The translations under genes and the position numbers were made by a program. DNA of 64,000 nucleotides from Iphione sp. A-MEVVRFRX5 (Eukaryota), in NCBI GenBank assembly GCA_976226885.1, contig OZ320317.1, positions 38,626,001 to 38,690,000 of the forward strand, in the 5' to 3' direction. Positions within the stretch are counted from its first letter, which is position 1. Each line of letters opens with the position of its first letter. A model generated the notes under the pieces. It searched no databases. It was not told the DNA's origin and saw only the letters and a program-made list of their open reading frames with translations. This document shows positions 11,126 to 34,299 of this stretch, in pieces.

Positions 11126-11163
<38 letters not shown>

Positions 11164-11172: not shown

Positions 11173-14100
11173 CACATCATGCACACAAACGAGCACACAC
11201 ATTCGTACACGGGCACACGTACACGCACACACAAACCGTGATTTAGTGGGATTTGGTGCTCGGGTAGTGCTCGTCTCGGGGCACTGCCGGGCGGGACACA
11301 GTTGATCAGTGAGGCACATGAACGTCGCACGCAGACACTACTTGCCTTGCGGGCCGGGGAGACGCGTGTCGTGAAAGGCACACGCCCCAAGGCGCCCGTG
11401 CTTCAATCGGTATTATCGCGGATCACCGGGTCTTCACGGTCAGGGCACGCATGGCCCAGAAGCCTGCGACCCCTCGCTAGCCAACTCCCCCGACTGTGAT
11501 GGCCTAACGTCTGCACAACCCCTTCCCCGCCTGGCCGGCTATTATTCGCATTACAGCTTATTTCTCGACCATTTATGTGCCATTCATCTTGTTCACGCTT
11601 TCCAACACATGGCGGCTCACCATGGCTGCCGAAGGTTGTCATTTGGAGGAACCCCGATTCTTTCAGAAGCCAGGAATAGCGGGTTGAAATGAAGGCCCGA
11701 CTGCCGAGGTCCGGGGAGTGATGCGTTGCCGTATTTTTTTTCACCATTGGTAGTGCTCTTTTCAAGTTAACTCGTCACAGCATAGGAGAATGGTTATGTG
11801 GGCAAAAAATAGACTACAGATCCTTAAAAAAACATGCTGCTGCCCATGAAACTTGATAGAAGGTGACGTCAAGAAAATGTTAATGACCGAGGAAAATCTC
11901 ACTTTGAACCTATCTTCAAACGTGCCCTTTCTTACTCAAGAGAGGCAAATTACATACGAGCTCTATGCAGAGATCAGGCGGCGAGAAAAGACCTATCATC
12001 GCGCATAAGAAAGGAAATTCTTAGAGTTCCTCGTAATATGGAATGTACCTCCAATACAAATAACTGAAAAAGAATTATTCAGACCGGAGATAAATTGAAT
12101 GACGTCAATTACCAGTCCTCCATTTGAAAAAAAGATGAGCAAGTCAAGTGTGCACATAGAAAGTTTTTTCTTGATCGCTCTTCAAGAACCAAATGAACCA
12201 ATCTCAACAGACGTTGTCACGGTCAGTGTCTCTTCACTGCTACAAATTAGGTGTATGTCAAGATAATCAGCTGAAAGAAGATGTGAGTGTCATTGAAATA
12301 ACCCCATCTCATCTCAAAAGTCGAAGGTTCATTGGTTTCAACTCCTGGTGTTGCCAGTGCTATGAGTTTTCTGTTTAATTCGTCTTTCATATTTGTTTTT
12401 TTAACTCTTAAGGACCCTTTATATCACCATTTCGCCTATTTGTTGTCTCTCTGTCCGTCATGTTCTTTTTTATAGTGTCCTCTTAAATCCTTTTAACGTC
12501 CCATCAGTTCAAATGCATTTCTGCTTTAAGCATGCTTTGGGTATTACGCATTTGCGTACAACCAATAGGATCTGTTCTGAACACTTCATATTGAAAAAAT
12601 GGCCTTTCCTTTTCTCTTATTCAGCAAAACATTCCTTTTATATGTTGACTCTGCTGCGTGAATTCAGTTTTTCCTGTACATCTACCTCCCTCAGTGTTAC
12701 CTAAAACGTCCTAGTGCTTTCCTATCTGGTCAAACTGTCTTTCTCTCCGTTTCTTGCCGTGTTCAGGTGGATGATTTGCTTCCCTACAGACAGCATCTCT
12801 AACTCACATGAACAGGGGCAAGACGCCTGAGACCTGGACCGCTGGTCGGGGCGCAATGCTCGCCAAACTCTTACCCCACCCACCTCCATCCTCCTTCCCC
12901 ATTATCCAACACTCCACCAGCGGCTCTCTATTAGGTATCACACGAATGGCATTGGGGGGCAGGCAAACCAGGAGCACAAAAAGCCTTTGTAATGTGAAAA
13001 CTAACTGAGATGTATACACTCCCGATGCCAGGCCGGCTGCTTCCGTAATGGACCCCGGTCGATAAAAAGACAAAACTGAGGAAAGCCCCATTCCCTGGGC
13101 CCAGTCCATCACACGGCTAGTTGGCATCATGGCGGGTAAGGTTCTCACGCCATAACATGACGTTAAAAGGAGGCCCACCTACTAAGGACTTCCTCATGAA
13201 TTGCTTACTTCGGGTCCTAAGAGCTTAAGCTAGATGACAAAAGTTCATTGCTTCTTAAATTCATGACAATATTAGATTGATTAGATTACAAGTTTACATA
13301 AATGCTTTAACAACACCTTGTGTCTTTACTTTGTAAGAGACGTGCTTGAGGCAAATCAAATAAAAGACTAAAATTCAAAACAGCGGCAATAGTTGTCATA
13401 ACAATAACAATAATATATAGAGCGACATTTAGGCACTTGAGGTGGCAGTCAGGGCATACTCTTCATAAAACAACGCTCACATTTTAACACCACTTAAAAT
13501 GCCACACAGAACTTATATTACAAAATGTGACGCAACACCTGGCCGTTATGATGCTTTATATGGTAACAAGAAAAAATGTAAAACCTGGAAGACGCACAGC
13601 TTCACCACATACTCAAGATATACAGTAACGAGTTCCCTAGGGTGTTTAACCATGACAATGCAGTTAGTGCTCCAACAATCTTATCCTACATAAATAAATC
13701 TCCAGCCAGGCGCCTATCTGCGAAATAACATTATTTGGTGCCACTCTCGAGATAACCGAGCGTTCTTGTGGTGTCCACAGTAAGACCTGCTAAAAATTGC
13801 CACGGTTTCTTCCAAGCCAGTAATAGTGAATTGCAATCGTGACGATTGTCATTTAACAGCATCATACTATTCCGGAAACTATGCATTCCAAAAATATTAG
13901 TTGCAATAGAACGTAAGCTAGGGGCATCCCTGTGACAGTTACTACTGCTTAACTTAGACCGCTTTTAATACAAAAAACCACACAGATTCCTCATATTTCA
14001 TGTAAGTAAACGCCTTCCAAAGAAGACCATCTTGATTGAGAGCATCTAGGGAAACGTGATATTACACAGAGCGGAAAAGCAAAGGCCACAAAAAGTGCAT

Positions 14101-14968
14101 GACCACTGGATAGGGAAAACGTTATTGAAGTTCGAAATCCATTTCCTAAGATTTCAGGTGCATGTTTCCACCCTCACAACATGCAGTCTGTGTTACTTTG
14201 ATAGGTACATCCCAGTCAAAACGAATTCTGAATCATATTACAAAATAATTTGTTGTGAGATCAGGATCAAGGGCGGGGAATACACTGACATGGAAATGTG
14301 CAAAGATGTTACCCCTGACCAACAGGAAAGCAAAATCACCAAATAGACACTGCTGCACCGCTGATGTTTTTTTCTAAGAAATCATAAGCGGTATGACTCT
14401 GTATCCTTATGTTCTCTATCACTTTAAAGGAACAAAGCTATGATTCATAAATATACAGTCGGACGTCCGCCTGTGCACACATCTGCAATTCGGACGCGTC
14501 CCTATAGTGGACGATTGAGCTCAGATGTGCCCCTGCAAACAAGGTAGTTATCGTGCACATTGGGGGCAGCAGGGTGGCTGAAGAAATTGTTTTCGCAGGT
14601 CAACAGGTATATTACAGTTTTGTTAATACTCTTGAAAAAGGCTTTTGCTTTGATATTTGAGGTGGCCCAGATTTCTCAACCAATCAGCATTAAATAATAT
14701 GACACCACAACTTCCAGTTTGTACCAGACGTCAAACACTAAATTTCAGAATCTCTCCTTATTTCATAGTAATTCTGAGCGGTGCAAAATCAACGTATATA
14801 CTACTGATATTCGTCACCTGCACCGGTACAAAGATGTTCACTTCATATGAAGTCCTCACACTTTGCTAACTGCAGTTGACACCCTCATGTTTTTGCCGGA
14901 CACCTTAGATACAAAGGAAACGCATTTTCAGGGTAGATATCATCCTACTGCAGATTTCAGCAGAACCA

Positions 14969-16130
14969 ATGATGCAAACCACACCAGATTCCAGCCAAGC
15001 AGAAGGACTTAACCGTATAGGAGAAAGTACAGATCATAAGGCAGAGCCCATTGCAGTCTCTGTCAGCTAGCTCAGCAGTGCGGGGTTGGGAAGACAAAAG
15101 GCAGGTCAATTCTAAAGAGAAAGGCAGAAATCATGCATGAATACTGACATTCAACTGATCCCTCAGCCAAACGCAAATTTCAATTGACCAAATCAGCGAC
15201 ACTTGATAAGAAAATCCTTTCCTAACTGCAAAGATTTTAGTCTCTCATCATTCCTATTTCTGGCCCCATGCTCTGTATGAAAGCTGTTGCTGTTGCCAGG
15301 CAGCTCAATATGGACAATTTTAAGGGGTCTACTGGCTGGATGACCAATTACCAGTATAGACATTGCATTGGTGGATTCAAAATTGTTGGGGCGAAAGCTG
15401 CAGTTGATACGATGATAGAGAAAGACTTTGCTCGAGCATTTACCAATGATCCAAAAGGGGTATGCACTCTGAAACATATTTAACATGGATGAGAGTGGGC
15501 TTTTCATGGGGCCAGATATCAGTTCTGGGAAGAAATCAAAAGACAGAATCACTGTGATGTTTTATGTGAATGCCATAGGTGTTCCAGAGACACCTGGCTA
15601 TTGGTAAATCAGTTAGTCTCTGATGTTGAGAGAAATATGAAGGACTTGTCTTCCCTACCGGTGGTATGCAGGACTAAAAAGAAGGCTCGGACGCCCACAC
15701 TTCTGTGTGAAGCTTAATTATTTCAAAAGAAAGATTATAGCCCAAGGGAGGACAGGCTTTCTCTTGGTGGACAATGCTCCAATCACCCAGAAGGACTGCA
15801 TTTGAGCCATACCAAGGTGGTATTCCTCCGCCCACTGCCACATCCTTGGACCAAGGCATTATTCAAGAGGTGAAGCTCCCTTGCAAGAAAGTACTTCTTT
15901 GAGTACACTGTCATACAATCTAATGAGAGAATGAGAGACCCCAATGCACCCATTTCCACTGTTGATATGCAGATGGTGGTATATGCTGGTAGAGAGATTC
16001 AGTCTGAGCAATGTTTAAGGCTTCTCCAAGGTGCAAGAAGGCCTCGCTGTGGAACAATTATGACCTCAGGAAGATGACAAGGACGAGAATGGAGTAGATG
16101 GGGTAGAGGAAACACAGGATACATGTATGA
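14969..16130 (+). pseudogene. Decayed pogo/Tigger (CENP-B/DDE_1) transposase
   Basis: With stops and frameshifts it reads: HTH-psq-like LAQQCGVGKT..SILKRK, CENP-B HTH IPISGPML..KA..A..L..FKGSTGW, then NMDESGLF (D at ~15488), LVDNAP (D at ~15770) and LDQGII (D at ~15849), and an acidic tail. Element TIRs were not identified. Confidence 0.85.
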
Positions 16131-16482
16131 CCACAGATAGAGACATTCAGGTAATGTTTAACAAGATGTGAAACCATTTTTTCAATAAGGGAGCCCTGGT
16201 CTGTCTAGAAACCCTCCAACCACTGTAACAGTGCCATAGTCAAAGGACCATATCCAAGAAAGCTGTGCAATCCAGCTTGGACAGTTTATTTAAAAATGAT
16301 TGCAGTTGTCTATTTGTCATATAGTTATTTTCAATCACAATAATAATGTTTTATTTGTATCCATAATTGTATTTATTACTGTACTTATGTTTACCTATTT
16401 ATGGTCGCCACTGACTACATATGTAAATCATTTTTGTACCATAGACTTACATTTATAAACCAGGCTGGAATATATACATATA

Positions 16483-16659
16483 CAGTGGAAACTCTATTTA
16501 CGACGATCCTTTGGTTCCCATCAAAAGTGGTCGTAATAGTGAGTTTGGTCGTAAATAGGTTATTATTGATATATGAAATCAAGACATCTGTTCCTACCTC
16601 AGGTGGTCTGAAATAGAGAATGGTCACAAATTGGAGTGGTCGTAAATAGGGTTCCACTG
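16483..16659. mobile_element. pogo/Tigger-type MITE (177 bp)
   Basis: TIRs CAGTGGAAACTCTATTTACGAC / GTCGTAAATAGGGTTCCACTG, flanked by TA on both sides. Confidence 0.85.
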
Positions 16660-17671
16660 TATAATTACTCACTGACACCCGACGTCGAGCACTGCATTGC
16701 CGGCACACACCGCTAATATGTACGTACTCGAGAAAATCGTTTCAGCGAAAGAAAATTATGGCACACAAAACAGTATAGAACCAAGCTTAAGAGATCTCTA
16801 CTGTCTTGCCACAATCACCTAAGAAGAGAAAGATTAACCTTCCGGACGACATTTCGACCACGGTGAACTACATATTGCTCGTCAAAATAAACCCAAACCG
16901 CCGTCACCAACATCAGCCCCGTCAGCTGAATGCAGCGATGTTAAGCCTGGCCAACTTCTCCTTCCCAATAAGGTTGTCGGATGAGAGCGTCCTTGTGGCG
17001 TCAGTAGCTGCTGGCTAATGGATCCCGCCTAGGAGTAGGGCGAATATAGCAGAAGAGACGGGGAAGAGCACGCTCGGCCCGCCCGTCGGAGGGCGCTGCC
17101 CTGTGGCTCCGTCACACTTAACAATGTACTCGCCCCAGCACCTCGTTCTTATATACCCACGCGTTGAAACTCCATACTCCGTTTTATTAGTTAGACGACC
17201 TACGCCATGAAGTGCCTTTTTTAAGGTAAATGTTTAAAGAGATAAATTGGTTCGTCACTTTTCCTTCTGGTTTATTTTGTTGTCATATTGTGGGCAATGG
17301 GATTGTTTCTCCAGCTACATAAGCGGGAAGAATAGAAATGGGCAATGCAGTGTTACTATGTTGTAAAGGTATTGGACCAATATCCATAAAGTAGGAAGGG
17401 GCCTGATTGAATGAGTTAGCTAAAAGGACGATACCACGTACAGTAATCGTAAGGTGTTCTTTTTTAATATGATTAATTGTCTTGGAAATTGGCAATATAA
17501 CCAGGCAGAGTCCTGTCTACTCATGAGTGATGTCAAAAGAAAATAAAGTTCTTATATGAGAGGCACTTGTGAGGGAGCTATACACAGACATTCACTTATA
17601 GACTGCAAATGCTATTATGAAACGGTGCATAAATGTGTTCAATCCCCTCCGTTTGAGATGGTGCGACAACG

Positions 17672-17740
17672 CATATATACATACATACATGCATACATAC
17701 ACACATACATACAATAGATACATATACACACATACGTATA
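17672..17740. repeat. Degenerate (CATA)n/(CA)n microsatellite
   Basis: Read directly from the sequence. Confidence 0.85.
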
Positions 17741-19739
17741 CCCTCCTTACTACTCTACTTCATTTGTCTTTTCTCCCTTTGAACATGCAGTTCATCCTTG
17801 CCTTTTAGCTCATTCTGCTCGCCCTAGTAGCCGTTCACCTGAGAGGGGCCAATTTATCGGTTTTACGAGCCGTGATAGAGGCTAAATGAATACAGTTAGT
17901 CGGCAGCTCTGATGACCGGCGCCATTTTGAATTTCGGGTGCCCTTCTGTTAGCGGCGCGCCCTGGCGGAAAAGTGATGTAGCTTCGGGGCAATTACCACA
18001 TGTTCCCATGGCATCTCGAGAACGTGACGTCACAGGATGCTATGACGGCGCTAATGGCGTCAACTGATCAACACAGCAAAACCCTGGGGAAGGTTGGTCG
18101 GTTAAAAGAATCACGGGAAAAACAGACTAGCTGCCAGCCGGGCCATTAGGCGAAGCATTTGTAGGGTTGAAACCATTAACGCAGGCAGTTGCAAAGTTTA
18201 AAACAACACCAATTTAGTAGTTCATTAATGTACACTACAATGTTTTGGGTTGTTAACTCTATGCATACTGCGCCACTGTATGCAGTCGTTTTTTTCGTGA
18301 TATCCATGGAAACGGTAAATTGATAAAGATATAGAAAGGGAAGAGGGATGTACGGAGAAATACAGTGGTCACGGGTTCACGGAAAGAGAAGGAAGGGTAG
18401 AAGGCGAAGACGTAGAACAATGAGAAGACCACCACCACCAACAAGAGCGACACCAACTACAAGTGCTTCTGGTGTATGAAACTGACCCTTCCATGCCAAC
18501 TACAGCCCAAGGGTTTTCTGCCGCGATATGCACCAAAACCACCATACGACACTTCCTCTCCTCTCATGGATCCTTCTCGCTCCACTCTCGATCCTTTTGC
18601 CTCTCCTCCTGCATCCACTTCTCCCTTCCTACATGATAACACGTAAGGGCCCCGTGAAGTAACCCCAACCTCTTTCAACTTCTCAATGACGTCATCCCGA
18701 TTTGCGTAGACAGGCTGCGCGTGCGCCCATCGGCTCGAGGTTTCGCCAAGGCACGTGCCGGCGCATCCCACGAAAGACCTTCACCTAGTGCCGCTGTCGC
18801 CGCGGCGGACGTGAGCGGAACTACGCAACCATCTTGAAGGCGGCTTGATGGTTCCGTTTTTGACGGCGGCTGCTTGCGGGCATGGTGGGCGGCCGGAAGG
18901 GGTTGGCGAATCCTCTTCCCTCTTCGCCAGCTCGCCGACAGGGATGGTGTCATTGGCGCTAACGATATTGGACAAGACTGTGCAGCCTCCTACGGGCGGC
19001 TCGGCAATTTAATTGGATCATGGAGATCACGTGGCGTCCCATAGCTTTACGCGGCATGATTTAAACCCACTTAGGCGGTCTATCCTACCCCCGTGCAGGC
19101 CCGGGCCCTCACGTTTAGCCCTCGGAGGCAAAACTCGAAGGAGCTGCTCACTCAAGTGTCGGAATAAACGCCGCTTTCTTGCTGAGTTTTGAGCACAGTG
19201 CTTTGTGGCTTGCGGGCTGGTATAGACATATAAACAGCCTGATTAGTAAATCGAAGACTGAATGTACACTGGGAATTTTTACTTGATGCTCAAGCTGGGA
19301 GATAGGAATGGTCACACTGTAAAAGCCCATGTTGAATCTCTTGAAATCTCTTTGTCTGACACTTGTGTACATGTAAATGTGGTAATACAATTTAACACCA
19401 ATATATGCTAATAGAATAAGATGGATTATCATGTTTATGGGCACCTAACGCTTTCTAACACATCAATAGTGCTTATAGGAACAGATAAATAGTTATGATA
19501 TCTAAGAGTAGAGGTTTTTATTCATGCCTGTGCACATCGAGCGGAGTATACAACTCTCTCATAGCCCTACAGTGTTTTTCCATATACATGTTTCACAATC
19601 TGTGTGGTGTAAACGTTTTATTTGAAACAACATTCAAAATGACAGAGCATGTTTTGATTAAAATTTCAATGTAGAGATCTAAAAAGCCAATGGTGAAATA
19701 GAGAACAAGATAATTTAAACTGAGCATAAACACCTATTT

Positions 19740-21920: not shown

Positions 21921-24252
21921 ATATATGGTTACGGAAAGTAAATATTCGGTTAAATAGTACTTTTTATACAGAGAAACACTTGGTTATTTGAAATTGTTAC
22001 AGTTAAGGAAGAATTCTGATTAATGCGACTCCGGTACATGAGGTCTCTGTACATGTAGAAGATTTATTTGAACATTTGACAGTTGGAAATGGACATGAAA
22101 ATGTTGGATATAACATTTTTACTCAAAATCAGAAGTAGAATAATCGGTTCACATAAAATAAACGATCTCAATTATGTTAGAAACTTATCCTCTTAGTAAT
22201 ACTCTCTAAGTCCTCCCTAGTAGATATTGTTAGCTAACGAGTCTTTATCTTTTCTGTACTTGAACAGCTAGGCTGATTCGCTTGATTATGATAGGAGCAC
22301 CTCCTGTTATTGTATTTATTTCGGTCGAATGGTGCGCTAATCGTGTAACAAGGTTCTGCGGATGTTTTTAGTTTACTATAAACACGTCTGTTGCGGCTTG
22401 ATACCACAAGGACAGACAACCCAGATAAAGGAGGGAGGAGGGGGCAATTGAAGAAACTGGAATATCGCAGTATTATTTGTCTTAAACAACCCCTCTTGAT
22501 TGTGGTACCGATACTAATATTGGTATATCCCGTAAATGAACGTATGCTTTACCGAAGATTCCATACCTGAAAAGGTCGTTAACTTTCTGATTGAGTGAAT
22601 TTTCAAAATCCATTCCTGTGCCGAACTAAATAATGCATACTTCTATTATTGGCTGTCACCATGGTGATGTTCACCTCTGTTGCTGAGTCGCTGAAATTAT
22701 TTCGCCTCTGCTCTTTTTGAATGCTACCTTTTTTAATTCGTTGGTGAAATGGTGGGGCGCGCCTTCCTGAGGGCCAGCGAGGTGCCATTGTCAAAGTGTC
22801 AGCCATGCAATTAAGACTGACCGATGGGTAAGCTGGTAGCCAGCGTGACTGGTGTCGCAAGCATTACGCACAGTTGTCACCCCTGAACCTGACTTTCATT
22901 TGAACCCAGCTTGTCGAATCGTGTACCGCCTCCACAAGCAATATGTGCCCTCCTTTATTCCAGAACGAAGCGGGATGTGGCGAGCAGACAACATGTGTGT
23001 CCAGCCAATCGTTATACAATGTATTTGTATCAAGCAAGTGCATTTACTGCTTATCTGACTGATGTCACAATCTCTGCCATTTAGACTACTCTGTTCTTCG
23101 ACGAAGAACACACGGAGAGAGAAAAAACCCGAGAGTTTTATCTAATCCGTCTACAGTTTCCTAGGATAGATATTTCAGCCGGAGGGTAATTGTGTTCATG
23201 TGAACAAAGGTTCTTACCAGCGAGTATTATGTAAATCAGAAATTGACTGAAATTCAGTAGCAAACGATATATGTCGACACGGACATAAATTTTGGAATAA
23301 ATTTTAATATCAAAAAAGTAACTTATTTCAAGGATACCTTTAGTTTCATATTCAACAGAATGACCATTTCTTTAGCAGAGCGCATTGATGTGAAGAATGT
23401 ATAACGAGGAGTCCATTTACATGTATCTGTTATCTGTCGACAACCAGTGATAGCATCAAGCCATTCCACAGTATTGTAAAGTTAGGAATACTCGTAAAGG
23501 TTTTATGGTTCTCGTCTTAAATTTCAAAATGATTCTCTCTCATGTTAAGCTTTAAGACACAGTGATTAGTCCCTTCAACTACACTGATAATCTTAGATTC
23601 TATAAAGTTAGTCATTTCTGACTATGCCAAGTTAGACTTGAAGAAGGTAGTCATATTAACTAATACCTCAGTCAAAATATAAGTTATTATGACTGAGAAA
23701 TTAGGCATCATGACCATATAAACTCAATCCAGAAATAAAGGTTGCATTAGTCATGAATGGCTATGATGTTAGTAGATATGACCAGAGCAGATCATCTTAA
23801 AAGTCAAATCATTAAACAGCAAAATTAATATTAAAATCGTACATATGTAAAGCTATAGTATTGTAATAGCTGATTTTTCAAAGAAAACAAAACTTAGTGA
23901 TAAAGCAAATAGATACAACAGCAAAAAGAAGAGGGACTACATTTTTGCAACTGCGTATGAAGACACTGCTCACAGGACCAAGAGGTGCACAGGAAAAGGC
24001 CGACACTAATGACGAAAGCGTTTTGCCGATTTTTGCTATTTTTCCTGCCTTAAATCAACCAGACCTCATCGGATTCATTTCAGGTATGTAAAGAGCTTTC
24101 ATTTGATATAAAGAACATGTCTGTACGTTGAGTTTGAGTGCTACAATTGCAGATTTTAATTGAACCACGTGGAGATCACAATATAGCGGCCGACTGCTGT
24201 CCGAGTGGTGTCATTAGCTGACAGTGGCAGTCGCCAACATGGTAGCTGCACT

Positions 24253-24403
24253 ACGTTACGTTTTCGGCTGCCAAGGCGCGGTAAATGCAGCTACAGACAC
24301 ATGCTATAGCTCGTTGGAAAGCTCTTGTTGTGAGCTTCCCAACGAGCTATAGCTTGTGTCTGTAGCTACATTTGCTGCGCCTTGGTGGCTGAAAACGTAA
24401 TGT
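24253..24403. repeat. 151-bp imperfect palindrome in the 5' region of the CACTA element
   Basis: Arms of about 72 nt around a TTGTTGT loop (GAAAGCTC-TTGTTGT-GAGCTTCC at the centre), with roughly 9 mismatches. Confidence 0.9.
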
Positions 24404-24948
24404 CGCCGAGTCGGCCGCTGATGGAGTCAACCGCTGACAGTATGCAGTTGTGACAGGGAGGATCAACTATTCTGGTGAAACATTATTGCCTATTTTGCTA
24501 TCAAAGAATTCATTCTTGGTGAAGTGTTATCACCTGTATATTTAAGTGAATGTGAATGATTTGGGACTTATCTCAGATTTCTTCCATTTGGTATATTATC
24601 AGGCAGTCAGAAAATATCAATGTATATGTACAGGGAAAACAAAATAGTTATGAAAAAGTCTTTCATGTCTCCGGCCATGCTATTTTCCACTTCTGTCACC
24701 TTCACTGATACTGGACCAGCTACTTGGCTGCTATGTTATGATCAAATTTCCATTTCAAGTGCTCATAGAAGGAATGGGTGTAGATCCTCGAAATAAAAAC
24801 CACTCTCTCCCTCACACTGTCAGCTTTTAAATGCTTTTTTGTTTGTATACAAATTGGATCAATATTAAGAAAATGGTGAGCATTCTCCTCATTCCCAGGT
24901 GTGAATATACTCTATGTGCCATATCTGTTATCTTTTCCAGAAATTATC

Positions 24949-27900
24949 ATGGAATCTATTGGAGCAAAGGGCGGGTGAGTGTCGCTTCCACAATGTATAG
25001 CTGTGAGTATTGTAGGGAAGAATCACACTTCAGAAAGTACTCCGAATTCTTGTCCCACCAAAGCCGGCAGCATGGAAATGATAAGAGATTTAGACTTATT
25101 TGTCCAGATAGAACTTGCTACAAAACATATACTACAATCAGGACTATCAAACGGCACCTTCAGAAAAAGCATTCAGACTTATTTACCAGACTTTTTCCAT
25201 TGTATTTAAACAGAGGGCAGACTGATATACAATATGAGACAGTAGATGATGATGTTAGTGTTTTGGAAGAGGTAGTTGCCACTACAGCTTCAGAGAATGC
25301 TGAGGACCCAATTAAAAAAGAGGATGTAGGAAGGACATTATTGAAAATAAGAGAAAAGTTTGGAATATCTGCAGTTTCAGTTGCAGAGGCAGCTGATGAG
25401 ATAAAAGACTTAGTGGAAAAAGACTCACTAGTATTGAAACAGAACATTAGACAGTGTTTGATAGAGTCTAATGTCGGCATTCCAGACAAACTAGATGAAC
25501 TGTTATTAAAGACATCACCACTGGTAGAAGCTCTGTCAGAACTTAACAGTCAGAAGAAACTTGACTCATACCTTGAGGAAAACTTTCCTCACATACCTCC
25601 TATTGAGTATATCCTGAATGAAGACAGGAATGAAAAGCATGACACAATACAATATATCTCCTTGGAAAAGTCCATTACAAGGCTTCTACACTTTGATGAT
25701 GTATTTGAAGAAGTCATTAAAGATAGGCAGTTAACAGACACTCTCAAAGATTGCTGTGATGGCAAAATTGTCCAAAATCATCCAATACTTTCTGATGAGA
25801 GCAAAGCCTTAGGGCTCATCATATACTTTGATGAATTTACCATAACAAACCCTCTTCGTGCTCAGTCAAAACAGTACAAAATTATGGCATGCTACTTCCA
25901 GCTGTCAAATTTACCCCCAAGAATGAGGTCTCAGTTGGATACAATTCATTTGGTCAGCCTGTGTAAAAGTGTGCACATACGAAAGTATGGGCTCCAAAGA
26001 ACTCAGCAATATTTGGTTGAGGAACTGAAATTACTCTCGGAACATGGCATTGTTATAGAACACAGAGGTAAAATGTTTAGTTTCAAATGTGAGCTGCTAT
26101 TTTGTTGTGGAGACAATCTTGCTGCACATCAAGTTGGTGGTTTTGTGGAGAGTTTTTCTGCAAACAGACCCTGTAGATTTTGTCTTGCTACTAGGAATGA
26201 TGTCATGGAAGGTAGATTAGGACAAATCAGAACCAAAGATAATGTTGATAAACAGGCAGAACTGGCAGAAAAGTTTTCTCAATTAAGGAGTACTTATGGA
26301 ATCAACAGAAAATCAATTTTCTCTGATTTGAACCATTTCCATGTAACATGTGGGCTCCCTAGTGATATTGCCCATGATTTATTTGAGGGCATTATTAAGA
26401 CAATCATGACAGAGGTAGTCAAGCATTGCATTCACATGAAGTTTTTCACTTTAGAAGAACTAAACAAGCAAATTACTGCCTTTCCATACTGTGGACCTGA
26501 CAAATGTGACAAGCCAAATCCTATCACATCAGCTCTTGAGGTGAAACAAACAATCCTGAGAATGTGGTGCCTGTTCCGTTTATTCCCGTTCATGATAGGT
26601 GATAAGATTCCACCAAATGATGAGGTTTGGAAACTGTACATCAACTTATCAACCATTGTTGAGTACATCTGTGCTCCAGCTCTAAAGCCACATCAAGTGG
26701 AAGCAATGCGGAAACTTATCATAGAGTATGATCATAAGAGAATGCAGGTATTGCCAAATACATCAAGGAAACCAAAAGATCATTATATACTACACTATGC
26801 AGACCAGTTCTTAAACTATGGTCCACTGATACATCTATGGACAGTAAGATTTGAAGCAAAGCACCAGTTCTTCTGTAAAGTTTCCAAGCTTAACACCTGT
26901 AGGAAAAATATCTGCAAGTCACTTGCAAAACGCCACCAATACAGAGATATTCTGTCAAGCAATCAGAAGAACCTGTTACTGCCTTTATCACCATATATAG
27001 TGAAAGGGAAGAAATCTATGGTGAAAAATGTCACAAGCTGTCTGCGAAATGCGTTGCAAATGGTGTGTCCAATGGAGGAATATGTATATGTTGGACAAGA
27101 ATTGCATGTAGGACATAACATCTATAGAAAAAACATGGCAGTAATCATGAAGGCATCAAGTCTTCAATTTGCAGAGATGGTCTGTGGCATTTGTTTGCAA
27201 GGAGAATACTTTCTGGCCTGTCAAGAACTGCAAAGCTCATATAATTCACACTTTCACTGTCATGTTGTGTCCAAGCAGCCACAAATGCTTCTTCTGAGAA
27301 TATCTGAATTAGCTGAACATCAGCCACTCAGTATATACCATCTACCTGGGGCTCCTCACCTTCGAGGAGTTCGCATTAAAAACATTGCTATGCTTTCATG
27401 ATATGGTGGCTTGTGCTGTAGTTGGATGTGACAAATCATTTTCCTATTTCAGAAATCTCCGATTTCATGTCACATGTGGCAAATGCAAGAAAATAATGAT
27501 ATGCAAAGCATTGGAGTTGACAGATGAAGTCAGCAAGCGGTTTGAGATTGACTGTTTCAAAATGCAATATTATATGCCAGAGGCAGAAGATTATGTTGAT
27601 TATGAAGAAGAAATGTTTGAATTCTTAAATGGTGAAGGAACCATTAACAAGATCATCGTGAAAACTAGTGAGAATTTAGATGAAGTCTCTACCATCTCCA
27701 CACCACCTGTCCCCCGGAGCAGTATAGAGCGCAGCTGTAGTCCAGGAGGACAAAGTAGCACAGGTACTGAAAGGCCTTTGAGGTTAGTGTAGCTTTAAGA
27801 TGAATGGGAAATATATTTAAGATGAGTATTTGTAATTCAATGTCAGGCCTTTCAGCATTGCATTCAGAAATACTTATTTAACATACTGTCGAACTAAACT

Positions 27901-30900
27901 TCTCTAAAGCACAAAGTCTCACCTTAAAATAGATTATCTATCATATTTCATGTAATACTAGGGAGATTCTATATAACAAGCAGAGATCTTTTGACATTTA
28001 GACATGATTTATATCAAAAGGCAAAGTTTTTATGAAACTGAATATACATGTATCTGGAAAACCTTTTTAAGGCCAAACAGGAATATCCCTTGGTTACATA
28101 GCACTTGCCTGTCCTCAGCCAAACAGAGGTTCCACTTACAGACAACCAAGTAGTTAAGGCATTTATTGAATTAAAGTATGTATCTTAATCTAAATGTCTG
28201 TATATTTTATCACTACATGATTTTAAAACTTGTACATTTTTACTACTAATTCATTAAGTTCTTTTTCCAGTCCTCTGATGGTTGAGTTTCCTGTCAACTT
28301 TCTTGCTCCTGATATCAAGAGAAAGCTTGACAGAGAGGAGAGACTTGCAACACATGAACTTAGCTGGATATGCAAAGCATGGTATCAATACTATATGTCA
28401 GTCAAGAATGATAGGTATGTATCTATTGCAGTTTAGCAAAATTTTACTCATGCCAAATAATTTAAATTCACTCAATTCTTGTCTATCTTGGCAAAGAGTA
28501 TAAACCTATCATGTGATGAAACTAGATACTCATACCCTGACCAAGTATCGTAATACCTGTTTGAAAGCATTCAATGTTATGTTGATATATGTTGACCATA
28601 ACATAATAACCCATATCTATCCTTTGACTTTTCATCAGTTATCCAGACTATAAAGCTTTGGCAGCAGCAACAATCTTGCAATTCCCTTCCCTATCACAAG
28701 GCGACAGAGAAACTTCCATTGTATATTAATCATTATTACTGTTATTTTTACCTAGATATAATATGCTTGTGCAAAGTTCTGTTTCCTCAAATGTTACACT
28801 TTATAAAAACTGTTTACATTCTTCTTAGATGATTTTTGGTCAAGTGCATTATTATACTTTTTTCCTAATTAATTGTTATCAGAAAGTACATATTAAGGGA
28901 CATTATTTGAGGAAATATGATGTTATCAATCCCCAATCACCACTCAAAAACCTAAGCAATTGATTTTGTTGGTTGAACATCAATTATGAGTCAATAGCTG
29001 TGTCACATAAAGGATAGGAGAAACTTTAAAAGACTTCAACAACTATTTATATTTGCATTTAACACAGCCAGAGAAACAAATTTTGTCCATTGGCCCTTAA
29101 TCAGTTAGAGACGATGATAGATGCATTTGAATGTAACTGTTAATTTGTGTTTATTAGTACTATCAATGTTTCAGATGTCTTTCTTGGTTCCTTTGTTGCA
29201 AATTTTGTATTTATAGTTGTTAAGTTTGGTAGTTTCTCAATAGTTTTAATTGGATTAATGGAATATGCTCAATTTTGTATTGGGCAGTTCACATAGAACA
29301 ATGAATTTGCAATCAAGTTATGTATTCTTTAACTTAAAAATATAATTTTCTGTCATTATTTATCATATTATCTTAAATTATACAATAAAAGTATACTACA
29401 TAATATAACAAATCTAACAAGTAATATTCATGACATGGATTATTTACTTGAATCTGATTTATTGTTGGTAAATTAATTTCCAATGTATTTATATAACCTA
29501 TAATCAAACTCAGTCTGTATAAACTCTGTATCCATAAATATGTAGTTTACAAGTAAATTCCATTTGTGAACACAAATATTTTAGTAAAGCAATAACATTT
29601 CTAATATAATGTGATAAATTTTATATCTTCTCAGGATTTATGGCGTGATCGTATTCAGACCCACTTTCAAAATCGTAGGAAGAGAAAGGACCGTGATCAT
29701 CCAGCAGTTGCATTACAAGTTGCAAAGAAAGCAAAGATAGCTCATAAAGGATCTATGGCTAACAAACATGGATTCACTAATTGGGCCCCTGCACCAGATG
29801 GGACTGATGATGAAGATTCATTAGCAAGTCATAGAAAGGTAAGTTGTTATAGAATGATTATATGACTCTAGCATATATAATTTGACAGTACAGATATAAA
29901 CTTTTAACATATGCTTTGTTTTTCCTATTCTAGTTAAAAGTAATATTTCTTGGATGGTTTGCACAAATTTTCAAAAGTTTACTGTAAAGGTTGAATATAT
30001 TAATGTCCTCTTTTAAAAAAAGTCACATTCTGATAAGCTATTATATTGAAATATGCCAATATCTTTCAAGTCTGAAAAGAACTCTTACATATGTGGCCTA
30101 CAAAGAGGTAATAGTTTTCTCTAATCTGATTTACACTATAGGTACTACAGACAGAGTACAAGAAGACCAAACCAGAATATGGGTTGGTGGACCAGTTAAT
30201 GGATCTCACATTTTGTGACAGAAGATCTCAGGTTTTAGCAAATAAGCCAATTGAAGAGATAGTAGGTGCATATCCCTGGCTGAAGAATAAGCAACAGGTT
30301 TGTGTATACTACTTGCACAAAAATATGAAAAAGTATGTTTTTAACATCTTCAAATAGAGCATATTAAATTCTCTATACTATGTTATATTATAGGAAGCCT
30401 GAATATGTAATTACATACATCTTTTCAATCTGCAGGTATCATAGCTCAATTTCTACATAATTTAATATTCTGTTTATTCTCCAGATTGACAAGGAGTTTA
30501 CACGATTGGAGCCCCCTGTAGACTTCGACAAGGCCATTGAAGAGGGTATGACAAAGCTACGGGAAAACATCTTGGCTAAGAAAACTGTAACTAAGGATAA
30601 AGCTGGTGGATTGGTTGACAAAGCTTCAAAAGAATGCTTGCCATCAGCTAGGACAGGTATACTATCCTATATTATTCTAATGTATAAATACATTGAAAAG
30701 TGATGTATTATTTTCATAAGTCTATTATTTCTAATAGTATTCTCTTAATTTTTGTATTTACTATTAAGATATATTAATACTGCTTTATCTGGTTTACTTA
30801 ACTTCCATCTCCCTAGCATTTATAATGTTACTGACTCTACAGAGAAGAACTAGTATTGAACTTTTCCTCCTACCATCAGGGTTGTCTTATAAGGGTCAGT

Positions 30901-32144
30901 ATAGACCCAATCTAAGCTAGCAGAAAACCCAGGTCAAAGTCCAGTGTTCTCCCAGTTCAGGGGGAAAAGATCAAGTCTCAGCAACATCCTACTATTTGTG
31001 AATGATAACTGCTGATTAGGGGAGGCATTCATTTAGTACAGATTAGAGGCGACGATGAGTTTTACTAACAATTTATAATGGAAACAAACGGACAGTCTAC
31101 ATATTAATCCAGTAAAGAGCTGTCTTAGTATGCTGCACAACAACCTAGCTCAAAGTAGCTCAGTGCAGAGGTCCCTTGGGGTTATCAGCTAAGGGATATA
31201 TCATATAATTGTTAATAATTTCAAACATCACATAGTGGAATACAAAGCATCAAATATAAAGGCCTAACAAGCTAACTATCCTGTACATGGTAATCATTTC
31301 AGTGTTCAATTAGTTTGAAATGAATCATTCCCCAGTGCAGAAATCAGTGTTAGTACCCCTGCGCATTAGTCACTGTAGCAATCAGCAGCTCATGAATATA
31401 GAAAAACTTTATTATTTGAAACTATGTTTGCTTTTAAGTGATTCGACAGGAAGCTGCCATCCTGAGATTGATAACAATTCTTGGAGAGAAGATTGAGGAC
31501 CTATGTATAACAGAGGATACAGAGGTATTTATTGATAAGCCTTCTTTGATAGGAAGATATTTTCATGAAAAAAGTACTGTTAGCAGACTTTGGTAGATTT
31601 TCAAGACCTCTCCTAGCACAAAAACATACCATCATATAAGTTTGCTCTAAAATTAATTAACCTCTATATTTTTCTTGTATATTTAAAGACACCAAGATCG
31701 CATTTTTGACCATCTATGACAGTTTTAAAGATATTTTCTCTTTAGATTTAATTCTTTCTATAGTTCCCATTAATGGCATTCATTGAATATCAAATTCTTT
31801 CTATTGAACTAATATATTATTTAAGAATTACTGTTGATGGATTTTCTCTTTTGCTTCTATAGGTAGCAGAAAATGATCCTACTCCCCATCTTCAGACTGT
31901 AGATGTACAGCTCTTTGATGGTACAGAAGAAATTGCAGTGGTAGTTGAGGGACAAAATGTTGGAAAGGCAACAGGACTGCTTGATGCCCTTGTACTAATG
32001 TTCAAGGTGTTGTACATCTATAATTTGTCATATCCAGCTAAACTGTCTAAGTTCTTTGGTTTTGTACAGAATTATTTTCTGGGTATTAAGGACAAGTCTG
32101 TGGTAGTAAAGGTACGAACCACTTATGCCAAGTTATGTAAGTAA
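24949..32144 (+). CDS. CACTA accessory gene, 10 coding exons, 512 aa (resembles the second, non-transposase ORF of animal EnSpm elements)
   Basis: Exons 24949-24974, 27453-27782, 28119-28175, 28271-28414, 28639-28720, 29635-29838, 30142-30297, 30485-30656, 31439-31524 and 31863-32144. All introns are GT-AG with compatible phases. Total 1539 nt with no internal stop. The C-terminus (LMFKVLYIYNLSYP..FFGFVQNYFLGI) resembles EnSpm accessory proteins, from recall. Confidence 0.75.
24993..27401 (+). CDS. CACTA/EnSpm-type transposase with N-terminal C2H2 zinc fingers (802 aa from ATG 24993)
   Basis: Uninterrupted ORF with two C2H2 fingers. Motifs YFDEF..TNPL, SNLPP..RSQL..IHLV, GDNLAAH..GGF.ESF....CRFC, DIAHDLFEG, PKDHYILHY and GPL..WTVRFEAKH. 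Confidence 0.9.
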   Translation: MYSCEYCREESHFRKYSEFLSHQSRQHGNDKRFRLICPDRTCYKTYTTIRTIKRHLQKKHSDLFTRLFPLYLNRGQTDIQYETVDDDVSVLEEVVATTASENAEDPIKKEDVGRTLLKIREKFGISAVSVAEAADEIKDLVEKDSLVLKQNIRQCLIESNVGIPDKLDELLLKTSPLVEALSELNSQKKLDSYLEENFPHIPPIEYILNEDRNEKHDTIQYISLEKSITRLLHFDDVFEEVIKDRQLTDTLKDCCDGKIVQNHPILSDESKALGLIIYFDEFTITNPLRAQSKQYKIMACYFQLSNLPPRMRSQLDTIHLVSLCKSVHIRKYGLQRTQQYLVEELKLLSEHGIVIEHRGKMFSFKCELLFCCGDNLAAHQVGGFVESFSANRPCRFCLATRNDVMEGRLGQIRTKDNVDKQAELAEKFSQLRSTYGINRKSIFSDLNHFHVTCGLPSDIAHDLFEGIIKTIMTEVVKHCIHMKFFTLEELNKQITAFPYCGPDKCDKPNPITSALEVKQTILRMWCLFRLFPFMIGDKIPPNDEVWKLYINLSTIVEYICAPALKPHQVEAMRKLIIEYDHKRMQVLPNTSRKPKDHYILHYADQFLNYGPLIHLWTVRFEAKHQFFCKVSKLNTCRKNICKSLAKRHQYRDILSSNQKNLLLPLSPYIVKGKKSMVKNVTSCLRNALQMVCPMEEYVYVGQELHVGHNIYRKNMAVIMKASSLQFAEMVCGICLQGEYFLACQELQSSYNSHFHCHVVSKQPQMLLLRISELAEHQPLSIYHLPGAPHLRGVRIKNIAMLS

Positions 32145-32378
32145 ATACATTTTTCAAATGTACAGTTTCAGCTTTTGCTACAGAAAGTTCATAAGTTTGG
32201 ATTGTCTTAACATGATGATCCTGCTTTCTATCTTCAGTGTACTCTTATGCAGCAATGTTGAGTGGTGTAGTTTTGCCACAATTAAATGTTCAAGTGCTAC
32301 AGATTATCTTTGTATGATGATTCTACTTCCTACTGTTAGTCTACTGATCTGTAGCTTTTTAATTATACTCAAGATATG

Positions 32379-32890
32379 GCAGGGATAGTTCAGGGCTGAT
32401 GAGGTTTACAGGTAGCAGTTTTATCTGAAAACCTTAAACCACTATTCAAAGTATTTTATATCTAAGACTTGATATGATATATCTTTGAAGTTTTAGAGGT
32501 TATTTTTAACATTCCCTCAGTATGACAAAGTCTGAGGTATTCCAAGTCACAAAAAAGACTTAGCCAATTATATTCTTTTGTTTGGCTGTATAGGTTTATG
32601 TTTCATGTAACTACATTCTATAAAAAGAAGAAAGCTTTAGCAGGGATAGCTCAGGGCTAATGTGTTTTACAGGTAGCAGTTCTACCTGAAAATCTTAAAC
32701 TACTGGTCAAATTATTTTATATCTAAGACTTGGTATAACTTTGTAGTTTTAGAGGTTATTTTTTAACATTCCCTTAGTATGGCAAAGTCTGAGGTATTCC
32801 AAGAGGCAAAAAAGAGTCAGCCAACTATATCCTAATGTTTGGATATATGAGTGTATGTTTCATGTAATGATTCTATACGAAAGGAGAAAT
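32379..32890 (+). repeat. Diverged tandem duplication (~260-bp unit x2, partial third copy near 33070-33245) in the CACTA 3' region
   Basis: Both units begin GCAGGGATAG.TCAGGGCT and share TTTTATATCTAAGACTTG, TTTTAGAGGTTATTTTT and AAAGTCTGAGGTATTCCAAG. Confidence 0.85.
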
Positions 32891-34299
32891 TGTAATCATT
32901 AGTACCTCAAGTATTTTGAGCTTATACTTAAATTTAGTCCTGAAGTGCTAGTTCATGGCAAGTGTGTTCTGATAGTTTAGAGTTAATGTGTTTTACATAG
33001 TAGCACTGTTAGACTTAGTGTAACCAAAGACATTGTCCAGCCTGTTTTCTTTCAAGAGGTTTCACAAGTTAATCTGTGTAGTTTTAGAGGGCATTTTTCC
33101 TCCATATGTAAGACCAAGACCATGTCCTCTGTATGTAAGAGCAAGTTTGAGATATTCCAAATAGCAAACCTTGAGTCAGCCGGTTAAGTCCTGGTGTTTA
33201 GACTCATAAATGTATGTCTAATCTAGGTACATTCTATACAAAAAAGGAAAAAAAATCTGTTCCAGTGCCTTATTTATTTAGAGCATATTCTTTGGTTATA
33301 GTAATTTTTTGTATTTTTTTATTTAATGTACCAAATATTTCAGGAAAAAACTCGTTTTTAACTTCTCAGTGTTTAAACTGCTTTGGTATGCACACATACC
33401 TTCATAAAATATGCATGTTTTTTAACAAAAGCTGGTATTGAAATAAACATTTGTATTTTACAGTATGCTTTCTTATTTTTTCAGAATATTTATACATGAC
33501 TAAGAATTTAAGTCTAAATATTAATAGAAATATGATTTCTTACAGGTTTAAAAGCTCTTCTCAAGTACACAGCAGATCACTCTTAGTGAAAGAATGAACT
33601 GTTGTGTATTTTGCAGAAGATGAAATAGATTAGTCCATTATGACCATACCAACTTAGTAAAACAGACTAATAGATTAGTCAAAAAATTCCTAGAAATGAA
33701 AATGTTCTTAGTCAAAATAACTAACATAAATATTTATTTGAACATCTCAGATTAGTCATTTTGATCTATATGCTTAGTCATTTTGACTAACTTGATGTAC
33801 ATATTCCCAGAAATTTGATGACTAATGTTCTTAGTCATACAAGACTAAGGTGACTAACTTGCCTTAGGTCACTTTTGGCACCGTCGTTTTGACCTAAGAA
33901 AGTTAGTCACTGATGACTAAGATTTCAAGGCCTGAGATTATCAGTGTAGGGATACAATGGGAATACTGGTGTATTGACCACTTGAAACCATATAAATATA
34001 TATATATACATTTGTACACCCAAAAAGTGACCATATGACTGAAACGTGAGTATCAATTGAAATAGACGAAAGAGTGAAAAAATACAATGACAAGAGAGAT
34101 GTAATGATGTACTGTAGCAAATCACTACTAGAGATGACCTCCAGGAGTCGAATCAAGCATGTAAACTAGTCCTAAATGGGACACTGAGGACTGAAATCTC
34201 ATCTCGGTAATTGAGGAATAAGGCAGGCCTTACCGCCCTGGTAGTTAGGGGTGGAAGGCTACTAAAATTGTTGGTACAAAGTCTAGGGAGAATAGGTGA

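What the first reader, a model, noticed from the sequence alone, without database searches (positions are those of the whole stretch)
24941..27452. Transposase ORF nested in an intron of the accessory gene: a splice/uORF switch between two proteins
A 34-nt exon (24941-24974) carries ATG GAA TCT ATT GGA GCA AAG GGC GG|GTGAGT. Splicing 24975-27452 (acceptor TTTTCCTATTTCAG) removes the whole transposase ORF. It joins MESIGAKG-G in frame to NLRFHV..., where the accessory protein's conserved-looking domain starts. If the intron is retained, the donor itself supplies the stop (GGG TGA). That leaves a 9-codon uORF ending 14 nt before the transposase ATG (24993), so transposase would need intron retention plus reinitiation or leaky scanning. 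One splice decision would then set the ratio of transposase to accessory protein. This is reminiscent of maize En/Spm TnpA/TnpD alternative splicing and P-element IVS3 retention, but with the opposite logic to P.
Basis: partly seen in the sequence, partly recalled or inferred. Interest (0 to 1): 0.8.

Follow-up and report, generated by a model that had tools for sequence, protein, structure and literature searches.

The report
Transposase nested in accessory-gene intron
An intact 10.4-kb CACTA/En-Spm-like jumping gene in an animal genome keeps its transposase gene inside the first coding intron of a second gene; six of seven distantly related elements share this layout, which resembles the maize En/Spm design with a new start-codon twist, but no RNA data could be found to show the splice in action.

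Summary

**The element.** It spans 23582-33946 and is CACTA/CMC-like. It has CACTG inverted ends, TA flanks and TTAGTCA subterminal repeats. It carries an intact 802-aa zinc-finger transposase ORF (24993-27401). A nine-exon second gene joins into one open 493-aa frame only if 24974 is spliced to 27453.

**Comparative support.**
- The seven closest elements found have transposases 37-40% identical to this one.
- Six of the seven have a GTGAGT or GTAAGT donor 18-85 nt upstream of the transposase ATG. About 5% would be expected by chance.
- That donor always ends an ATG-bearing internal exon after the second base of a codon (phase 2).
- All eight copies of the next exon open with a matching phase-2 acceptor just before a conserved PB1-like domain.
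- The rival start, ATG 27403, is not conserved.

**Not shown.**
- No sequencing runs were listed and no spliced homologue was found, so the junction has no RNA evidence.
- Intron retention, reinitiation after the 9-codon uORF and ratio setting remain inference.

**Novelty.** A transposase nested in intron 1 of the accessory gene is the classical maize En/Spm layout. New here are the animal clade, the PB1-like accessory protein, and an accessory start codon that becomes the transposase's uORF. I rate it a new variant of a known kind, of moderate interest.

The parts
23582..23593 (+). Left terminal inverted repeat CACTGATAATCT, preceded by TA (23580-23581)
   Evidence: Inverted repeat I2; sequence read. 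The terminal 12 nt pair perfectly with 33935-33946.
33935..33946 (+). Right terminal inverted repeat AGATTATCAGTG, followed by TA (33947-33948)
   Evidence: Twelve of the window's 22 TTAGTCA motifs lie within about 450 nt of the two ends (11.8 expected in the whole window).
23982..24481 (+). CpG-undepleted leader region holding a 72-nt-arm hairpin (24253-24403). Candidate promoter or first non-coding exon; its exon boundaries are unknown.
   Evidence: CpG o/e is about 1 here against 0.24 for the whole element. The hairpin folds at -128 kcal/mol, z -15.9. A possible donor CAG|GTATGT lies at 24084. The role is inferred.
24941..24974 (+). 34-nt ATG-bearing mini-exon. The accessory start codon is at 24949, and the phase-2 donor GG|GTGAGT starts at 24975.
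   Evidence: Equivalent exons with phase-2 GTGAGT/GTAAGT donors occur in L002, L003, L004, L005 and L007.
24949..24978 (+). 9-codon uORF (MESIGAKGG, stop TGA) that forms only if the intron is retained
   Evidence: The stop comes from the donor itself (xxG TGA or TAA), and the same happens in all six elements that have the donor.
24975..27452 (+). 2478-nt intron of the accessory gene, containing the whole transposase ORF
   Evidence: Canonical GT..AG with a pyrimidine tract. There is no AATAAA or ATTAAA between the transposase stop and the acceptor.
24993..27401 (+). Intact transposase ORF, 802 aa, with two N-terminal C2H2 zinc fingers and a Tnp2/Plavaka-like DDE core
   Evidence: It retains all 59 columns that are invariant in the 12-member alignment. 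The start M-x-x-C-x-x-C is conserved.
27403..27405 (+). Alternative in-frame ATG, 1 nt after the transposase stop (TGAtATG). It lies in the intron and is not conserved.
   Evidence: The equivalent region in the relatives carries stop codons.
27453..27782 (+). Accessory exon 2: PB1-like beta-grasp domain plus linker; phase 2 at both ends (donor AG|GTTAGT)
   Evidence: AlphaFold gives pLDDT about 97 over residues 1-72, with strand 1 starting at residue 2. The top Foldseek hits are PB1 domains.
28271..28414 (+). Accessory exon 3 (ccag|T ... GAT AG|GTATGT)
   Evidence: Homologous exons found in the relatives by tblastx; boundaries read; frame verified.
28639..28720 (+). Accessory exon 4 (SYPDYKAL...)
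29635..29838 (+). Accessory exon 5, with the conserved basic motif FQNRRKRKDRD
30142..30297 (+). Accessory exon 6
30485..30656 (+). Accessory exon 7
31439..31524 (+). Accessory exon 8
31863..32144 (+). Accessory exon 9, ending in stop TAA at 32142-32144. Poly(A) signals follow at 32281 (ATTAAA) and 33442 (AATAAA).

Best explanation
**What it is.** Window 23582-33946 is a structurally intact, two-gene CACTA/CMC-type DNA transposon of an animal. Its two genes share one transcription unit arranged as in maize En/Spm.

**The arrangement.** One or more non-coding leader exons are followed by a 34-nt exon (24941-24974) that holds the start codon of the accessory protein. The next intron (24975-27452) contains the complete transposase ORF.

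**If the intron is removed.** The mRNA encodes a 493-aa accessory protein. It begins with a short peptide and then a PB1-like domain. This protein probably oligomerises and acts at the TTAGTCA subterminal repeats, as TnpA does in En/Spm.

**If the intron is retained.**
- The accessory start codon opens a 9-codon uORF that the donor itself closes.
- The transposase ATG lies 14 nt downstream of that stop.
- It can be reached only by reinitiation or leaky scanning.
- The donors match the GTRAGT consensus and every uATG has a purine at -3.
- Accessory protein should therefore greatly outnumber transposase.

**Shown.** The sequence anatomy; the uninterrupted spliced reading frame; conservation of the donor, the acceptor and their phases across deeply diverged relatives; and the domain boundary falling at the acceptor.

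**Inferred.** That both RNA forms are made; that transposase comes from the retained form of the same transcript; reinitiation; and the function of the accessory protein.
For: **Anatomy and reading frame**
- The anatomy was read directly.
- Nine exons with canonical AG/GT borders give a 1482-nt CDS with one terminal stop.

**Relatives examined**
- The related transposases are 37-40% identical to this one and 41-62% identical to each other.

**Donor conservation**
- A GTRAGT donor lies 18-85 nt upstream of the transposase ATG in 6 of 7 elements. The background expectation is 0.05 per 90-nt window, giving a binomial P of about 1e-7.
- Each donor closes an ATG-initiated internal exon in phase 2 and yields an immediate TGA or TAA stop if the intron is retained.

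**Acceptor conservation**
- The PB1 exon opens with a pyrimidine-tract acceptor in phase 2 in 8 of 8 copies.
- In six copies the acceptor is at the identical position, one base plus two codons before R/K-F-x-V.
- Frames upstream of these acceptors carry stops, and four of seven relatives have no in-frame ATG there.

**Domain boundary**
- The first beta-strand of the confidently modelled domain starts at residue 2 of the exon.
- In 31 aligned homologues the domain is always N-terminal.

**Shared transcript**
- There is no AG-plus-pyrimidine acceptor between the donor and the transposase ATG.
- There is no poly(A) signal between the transposase stop and the acceptor in 6 of 7 elements.
- A transposase mRNA from the shared promoter must therefore carry the uATG and run on into the accessory exons.

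**Precedent**
- In Spm/En the tnpD ORF lies in intron 1 of tnpA, and the tnpA mRNA is about 100 times more abundant (PMC2613891).
- The animal CACTA element SmTRC1 makes alternatively spliced transcripts (PMC1636069).
Against: **No RNA evidence**
- No run was listed for this DNA.
- The profile search of 1.84 billion proteins returned only 33 hits, all short exon-like ORFs. None was a spliced full-length accessory protein.

**Points against retention and reinitiation**
- The donors are strong, which argues for efficient splicing and does not itself indicate retention.
- Fourteen nucleotides is short for efficient reinitiation.
- In L005 and L007 further upstream ATGs lie between the donor and the transposase ATG.

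**Unresolved alternatives**
- A separate internal promoter for the transposase cannot be excluded.
- In this copy only, ATG 27403 offers an alternative in-frame start.

**This copy may be silent**
- The element is strongly CpG-depleted (o/e 0.24).

**Exceptions among relatives**
- L001 has lost the donor.
- The more distant relatives L006 and L009 carry the accessory ATG inside the PB1 exon.
Confidence: 0.6

Rival explanations
1. The accessory protein starts at ATG 27403, one base after the transposase stop. It would be made from an unspliced bicistronic RNA by termination-reinitiation, or from its own promoter. On this view the mini-exon is only a leader exon whose ATG is an ordinary uORF.
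For: ATG 27403 is in frame with exon 2, and the frame is open from 27313. TGAtATG resembles the stop-start overlaps used for termination-reinitiation (general knowledge). The residues MVACAVVGCDKSFSYFRNLRFHVTC happen to fit a C-x4-C-x12-H-x2-C pattern. More distant relatives do start inside the PB1 exon.
Against: In all seven copies of the closest relatives the equivalent stretch is non-coding, with stops or no ATG. A pyrimidine-tract acceptor sits immediately before the domain in every copy. The H and C of the apparent finger belong to strand 1 of the PB1-like fold. The donor and acceptor phases match in all elements that have both, which a mere leader exon would not require.
Confidence: 0.12
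2. The nested layout is real, but transposase is not made by intron retention plus reinitiation. It would come from a separate transcript that starts inside or just upstream of the intron and lacks the uATG. Splicing would then not set the ratio of the two proteins.
For: Nothing in the sequence fixes the transcription start. Strong consensus donors predict efficient splicing of the shared transcript. A 14-nt spacer is poor for reinitiation (general knowledge).
Against: The donor is only 18-27 nt from the transposase ATG in four lineages, and the ATG is always the first residue of the zinc finger. This suggests coupling and leaves little room for a dedicated promoter. In En/Spm both mRNAs share one promoter and first exon (PMC1636069, PMC2613891).
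Confidence: 0.2
3. The match of mini-exon, donor and acceptor in this window is a chance gene-model artefact.
For: GT and AG sites are frequent, a one-in-three frame match is unremarkable, and there are no RNA data.
Against: The arrangement recurs in 6 of 7 elements (donor) and 8 of 8 copies (acceptor), at transposase identities of 37-62% where non-coding DNA no longer aligns. The nine-exon frame is intact.
Confidence: 0.03

Closest known systems
Maize En/Spm (and Antirrhinum Tam1): tnpA/tnpD alternative splicing
   Same: - CACT-type inverted ends and subterminal repeats.
- One transcription unit, with the transposase (tnpD/Tnp2) ORF lying in intron 1 of a multi-exon accessory gene whose product is unrelated between families.
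- Removing that intron gives the accessory mRNA.
- The transposase mRNA carries the accessory exons behind it (PMC2613891, PMC1636069).
   Different: - The host is an animal, and the flanks are 2-bp TA rather than a 3-bp duplication.
- The accessory protein shows no similarity to TnpA and begins with a PB1-like domain.
- The accessory start codon lies upstream of the intron, in a mini-exon. The intron is therefore a coding phase-2 intron, and retention turns that start codon into a uORF 14 nt before the transposase ATG.
- From my own knowledge (not checked here), exon 1 of En/Spm is a non-coding leader, and tnpD arises by use of alternative acceptors rather than by plain retention.
- No transcripts have been observed here.
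SmTRC1, the CACTA element of Schistosoma mansoni (PMC1636069)
   Same: An animal CACTA-type element with a Transposase_21-like ORF. ESTs and RT-PCR show several spliced forms, some lacking the transposase region and some carrying two ORFs in tandem. The short forms are the more abundant.
   Different: SmTRC1 is 4.5 kb and has no reported conserved accessory gene, start-codon mini-exon or uORF arrangement. Its products were not detectably conserved elsewhere. The family described here has a nine-exon accessory gene conserved across lineages.
Drosophila P element: IVS3 retention
   Same: Retention or removal of one intron decides which element-encoded protein is made.
   Different: In P, removing the intron gives transposase, and retention gives a truncated repressor that shares the N-terminus. 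Here removal gives an unrelated accessory protein. Retention gives a 9-residue peptide plus, at best, reinitiated transposase.
Short-uORF reinitiation control (GCN4/ATF4 type)
   Same: A short uORF with a start codon in good context lies just upstream of the main ORF.
   Different: Here the uORF would exist only in the intron-retained isoform, because its stop codon is the splice donor. The spacer is only 14-23 nt in four lineages. Nothing has been tested.

Membership tests
CACTA / En-Spm (CMC superfamily) DNA transposon | Terminal inverted repeats beginning CACT(A/G) | tested here: met
   CACTGATAATCT at 23582-23593 pairs perfectly with 33935-33946. The relative L002 has CACAG ends.
CACTA / En-Spm (CMC superfamily) DNA transposon | Short target-site duplication: 3 bp in plant CACTA, 2-3 bp across CMC | tested here: inconclusive
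   TA flanks both ends here and in L002. This fits a 2-bp duplication, but no empty site was available. A 3-bp duplication is not present (CTA against TAG).
CACTA / En-Spm (CMC superfamily) DNA transposon | Arrays of subterminal repeats | tested here: met
   TTAGTCA occurs 22 times in the window against 11.8 expected (0 of 100 shuffles reach 22). Twelve of these lie within about 450 nt of the two ends.
CACTA / En-Spm (CMC superfamily) DNA transposon | Transposase with the Tnp2 / Transposase_21 DDE domain | tested here: inconclusive
   PF02992 scores 17 bits against a cut-off of 28.6, E 0.0035. Weak Transposase_21 hits appear in 5 of 12 family members and weak Plavaka hits in 4 of 12. No solved structure matches beyond the zinc fingers.
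En/Spm-type nested two-gene unit | Transposase ORF entirely inside an intron of the accessory gene | tested here: met
   The gene model has an intact spliced frame, and the splice sites and phases are conserved in relatives. This is comparative evidence, not RNA evidence.
En/Spm-type nested two-gene unit | Both mRNAs produced from one promoter by alternative splicing | not testable with these tools
   No sequencing runs were listed, so read laying could not be used.
En/Spm-type nested two-gene unit | Accessory protein homologous to TnpA / Tnp1 | tested here: not met
   No accessory exon gives a Pfam hit. The N-terminal domain is a PB1-like beta-grasp.
P-element-type retention switch | The retained intron truncates the transposase into a repressor that shares its N-terminus | tested here: not met
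   Retention here ends a 9-codon peptide, and the transposase is a separate ORF in another frame.
PB1 domain (accessory protein N-terminus) | Beta-grasp fold with a basic strand-1/2 face and an acidic OPCA-like face | tested here: inconclusive
   The model has pLDDT about 97 with topology bb-a-bb-a-b. The best Foldseek hits are PB1 domains of NBR1, p40/p67phox and PKCiota/Par6, with target-normalised TM 0.56-0.73 but E only 1e-3 to 1e-2. There is no Pfam PB1 hit. K13 and D46 are nearly invariant.

The most novel reading that the evidence does not exclude
A clade of animal CACTA-like transposons may have evolved a dual-use start codon. The AUG of the accessory protein sits in a mini-exon whose splice donor lies 18-27 nt before the transposase AUG. 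On each transcript the same AUG would then either begin the accessory protein (spliced) or open a donor-terminated uORF that throttles transposase translation (retained). This would hard-wire a large excess of accessory protein over transposase through coupled splicing and reinitiation. The PB1-domain accessory protein might feed back on that choice.
Probability: 0.3. Interest if true: 0.65.

Novelty: new variant of a known kind. Interest (0 to 1): 0.5.

Why it matters
If RNA data confirm it, the En/Spm design would not be a plant peculiarity. That design is one transcription unit, with the transposase hidden in the first intron of an accessory gene and a splice choice limiting the enzyme. It would then be either an ancient or a repeatedly evolved feature of CACTA/CMC elements, kept in animals across transposase divergence down to 37% identity.

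The start-codon mini-exon adds a simple, testable way of combining splicing control with translational control of a transposase.

The work also defines a previously unnamed accessory protein family with an N-terminal PB1-like domain. It supplies an apparently intact animal element with both genes for functional work.

Tried and rejected
**Searches that gave nothing**
- RNA evidence: two searches for sequencing runs listed none (window 23900-29880 as RNA; 24900-27800 as any kind). The one read-laying run was therefore never usable.
- A word-index protein search with the exon-2 peptide gave no hits.
- The exhaustive profile search with the PB1-exon alignment gave 33 hits, all exon-sized ORFs of 66-215 aa apart from one spurious 484-aa protein. 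No spliced full-length accessory protein could show what lies N-terminal of the domain.
- The cluster look-up gave no names.
- Rfam found nothing in the window.
- Pfam found nothing on any accessory exon.
- The ESM Atlas returned only unnamed eukaryotic clusters for the last exon.
- Earlier scan notes held nothing that tests this junction.

**Ideas considered and rejected**
- A C2HC zinc finger starting at ATG 27403. Half of the pattern belongs to strand 1 of the PB1-like domain and the other half is not conserved.
- A direct splice from exon 2 to the exon at 29635. The phases clash (2 against 0). This led to two further conserved exons, at 28271-28414 and 28639-28720.
- Intronic polyadenylation as the source of transposase mRNA. 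There is no AATAAA or ATTAAA in the gap in 6 of 7 elements.
- An acceptor between the donor and the transposase ATG. None exists.

**Not attempted**
- Folding or searching the whole spliced 493-aa protein. It has no reference and would have had to be typed.
Full report
**1. The observation**

- An acceptor ttatcttttccag| ends at 24940.
- Exon 24941-24974 carries ATG 24949, with A at -3 and G at +4, followed by GAA TCT ATT GGA GCA AAG GGC GG.
- The donor GG|GTGAGT begins at 24975.
- Read through, the frame gives GGG TGA. This makes a 9-codon uORF ending at 24978, 14 nt before ATG 24993.
- ATG 24993 opens an 802-aa ORF that ends with TGA at 27399-27401.
- The acceptor ttttcctatttcag| ends at 27452.
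- Joining 24974 to 27453 reads MESIGAKG-G-NLRFHV in frame.

**2. What the surrounding element is**

- Inverted repeat I2, read, defines a 10,365-bp element at 23582-33946. Its 12-nt termini are perfect (CACTGATAATCT / AGATTATCAGTG) and TA lies on both flanks.
- TTAGTCA occurs 22 times in the window against 11.8 expected. Twelve copies are crowded into the two subterminal regions.
- The 802-aa protein has two N-terminal C2H2 fingers.
- Its match to Pfam Transposase_21 (Tnp2) is weak and below threshold. Its relatives add weak Transposase_21 and Plavaka hits.
- Together with the termini, this places the element in the CACTA/Mirage/Chapaev group. The Pfam criterion itself is not met.
- The closest proteins in 5.8 billion are only 37-40% identical.

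**3. The second gene**

Downstream of the transposase I found conserved coding blocks by tblastn and tblastx against the related loci. I fixed their borders by reading the DNA.

- Nine exons join into a 1482-nt frame with a single terminal stop, giving 493 aa. They are 24949-24974, 27453-27782, 28271-28414, 28639-28720, 29635-29838, 30142-30297, 30485-30656, 31439-31524 and 31863-32144.
- All are bounded by canonical AG and GT.
- No exon has a Pfam match.
- Exon 2 folds with pLDDT about 97 over residues 1-72 as a beta-grasp. Its first strand starts at residue 2 of the exon.
- The best structural matches are PB1 domains of NBR1, p40/p67phox and PKCiota-Par6. Their E-values are marginal, 1e-3 to 1e-2.

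**4. The test that could be run: comparison**

I fetched loci around the transposase homologues: L001-L009. The seven closest elements come from at least two other sources, ENA ERZ26222911 and Logan ERR14113986. Their transposases are 41-62% identical to one another, so their non-coding DNA is not alignable.

Three results stand out.

(a) *Donor.*
- A GTGAGT or GTAAGT donor lies 18, 25, 26, 27, 83 and 85 nt upstream of the conserved transposase ATG in six of the seven elements.
- The background frequency predicts 0.05 per 90-nt window, a binomial P of about 1e-7.
- L001 has lost the donor.
- In each case the donor ends an internal exon that has its own upstream pyrimidine-tract acceptor.
- That exon contains an ATG with a purine at -3.
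- The donor falls after the second base of a codon, so retention always gives xxG TGA or TAA.

(b) *Acceptor.*
- All eight copies of the PB1 exon are preceded by a pyrimidine tract and AG in the matching phase.
- In six of them the acceptor lies exactly one base plus two codons before the conserved R/K-F-x-V.

(c) *No local start codon.*
- Upstream of these acceptors the frame carries stops.
- Four of seven relatives have no in-frame ATG there, so they must import the start codon by splicing.

An alignment of 31 homologues shows the domain is always at the N-terminus.

This comparison is strong evidence that the gene model is right and under selection. That ATG, and the zinc-finger-like pattern it creates, are peculiar to this copy.

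**5. What could not be shown**

- No sequencing run, RNA or DNA, was listed for this DNA, so no reads could be laid.
- The word search with exon 2 found nothing.
- The exhaustive profile search found 33 proteins, all exon-sized apart from one spurious 484-aa hit. No spliced transcript or curated gene model of this accessory family exists in the libraries.

The junction therefore has no direct RNA support. Intron retention, reinitiation and ratio setting remain inference.

**6. Likely mechanism**

Sequence constraints narrow the options.

- No usable acceptor lies between the donor and the transposase ATG.
- No poly(A) signal lies between the transposase stop and the acceptor in 6 of 7 elements.
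- A transposase mRNA made from the shared promoter must therefore contain the mini-exon with its well-placed uATG. It must retain the intron and continue through the accessory exons, as the tnpD mRNA of Spm does.
- Consensus donors predict that most transcripts are spliced, so accessory protein should be in excess.
- The retained form would yield transposase only by reinitiation after a 9-codon uORF or by leaky scanning.
- Its stop codon would lie far upstream of several exon junctions, which would expose it to nonsense-mediated decay. This last point is my inference from general knowledge.

Points against:
- The 14-nt spacer is short for reinitiation.
- L005 and L007 have additional upstream ATGs between the donor and the transposase ATG.
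- An internal promoter cannot be excluded.

The element is strongly CpG-depleted (o/e 0.24 against 0.68 for the window). The exception is a 500-bp island at 23982-24481, which may be the promoter. This copy could also simply be silenced.

**7. Comparison with what is known**

- In Spm/En the large ORF of tnpD lies in intron 1 of tnpA. [quoted passage not shown] Tam1 is organised in parallel, with an unrelated accessory protein (PMC2613891; summary also in PMC1636069).
- The animal CACTA element SmTRC1 produces several spliced forms, and the short forms predominate (PMC1636069).
- The nested layout is therefore the known hallmark of the superfamily, not a new principle.

What differs here:
- The accessory start codon lies upstream of the transposase-bearing intron, so the intron is a coding one.
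- The donor sits next to the transposase ATG.
- A donor-terminated uORF results when the intron is retained.
- The accessory protein is PB1-like.

More distant relatives keep the accessory ATG inside the PB1 exon. These are L006 at 32% identity and L009 at 27%. L009 still has a donor exon upstream of the transposase and an acceptor 25 nt before that ATG, which is the En/Spm-like state. The start-codon mini-exon therefore looks like a feature of one clade.

**8. Verdict**

- The gene model is supported by conservation.
- The regulatory reading is plausible but untested.
- It is a new variant of a known kind, of moderate interest.

Noticed in passing
window 24240-24415: A near-perfect hairpin with 72-nt arms at 88% pairing (RNA fold -128 kcal/mol, z -15.9). 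It lies inside the only CpG-undepleted stretch (23982-24481) of an otherwise CpG-poor element (o/e 0.24). Its position between the subterminal repeats and the first coding exon recalls the GC-rich control region of maize Spm. It could be a promoter or leader, a small-RNA source or a nested palindromic insert.
   Followed up: partly
window 27454-27670: The N-terminal domain of the accessory protein is a confidently modelled PB1-like beta-grasp. It has a conserved KK on strand 2 and an acidic DYVDYEEE stretch. This suggests head-to-tail self-association, in a protein family that has no name in Pfam or in the protein collections.
   Followed up: partly
window 27399-27405: The transposase stop and an in-frame ATG for the accessory exon are one base apart (TGAtATG). 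This could allow termination-reinitiation on the intron-retained RNA in this copy. It is absent from all relatives.
   Followed up: partly
window 23957-24083: An ORF starting at ATG 23957 would be in frame with the mini-exon ATG if the donor CAG|GTATGT at 24084 is joined to 24941. The accessory protein could then be about 45 residues longer, depending on where transcription starts.
   Followed up: no
L009:1619-1690 and 6107-6130; L006:3530-3560: More distant relatives carry the accessory start codon inside the PB1 exon. L009 still has a GTGAGT-ended exon upstream of the transposase, and joining it to the acceptor creates a TGA. This is the En/Spm-like arrangement with a non-coding leader.
   Followed up: partly
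L002:7927-7961 and 18934-18968: The related 11-kb element has TA|CACAG...CTGTG|TA ends and the same GGTTAGTCA subterminal motif as the window element. The motif is thus conserved despite only 40% transposase identity.
   Followed up: no
L004:1-6700 and 10001-18700: Two diverged elements of this family lie in tandem in the same orientation on one contig. The second copy has CAA where the others have the CAG acceptor of exon 5, so it may be decaying.
   Followed up: no
window 24831-24992: The transposase frame stays open for 54 codons upstream of its ATG, across the mini-exon and into the preceding intron. The relatives start at the conserved M-x-x-C-x-x-C, so this is probably chance.
   Followed up: partly
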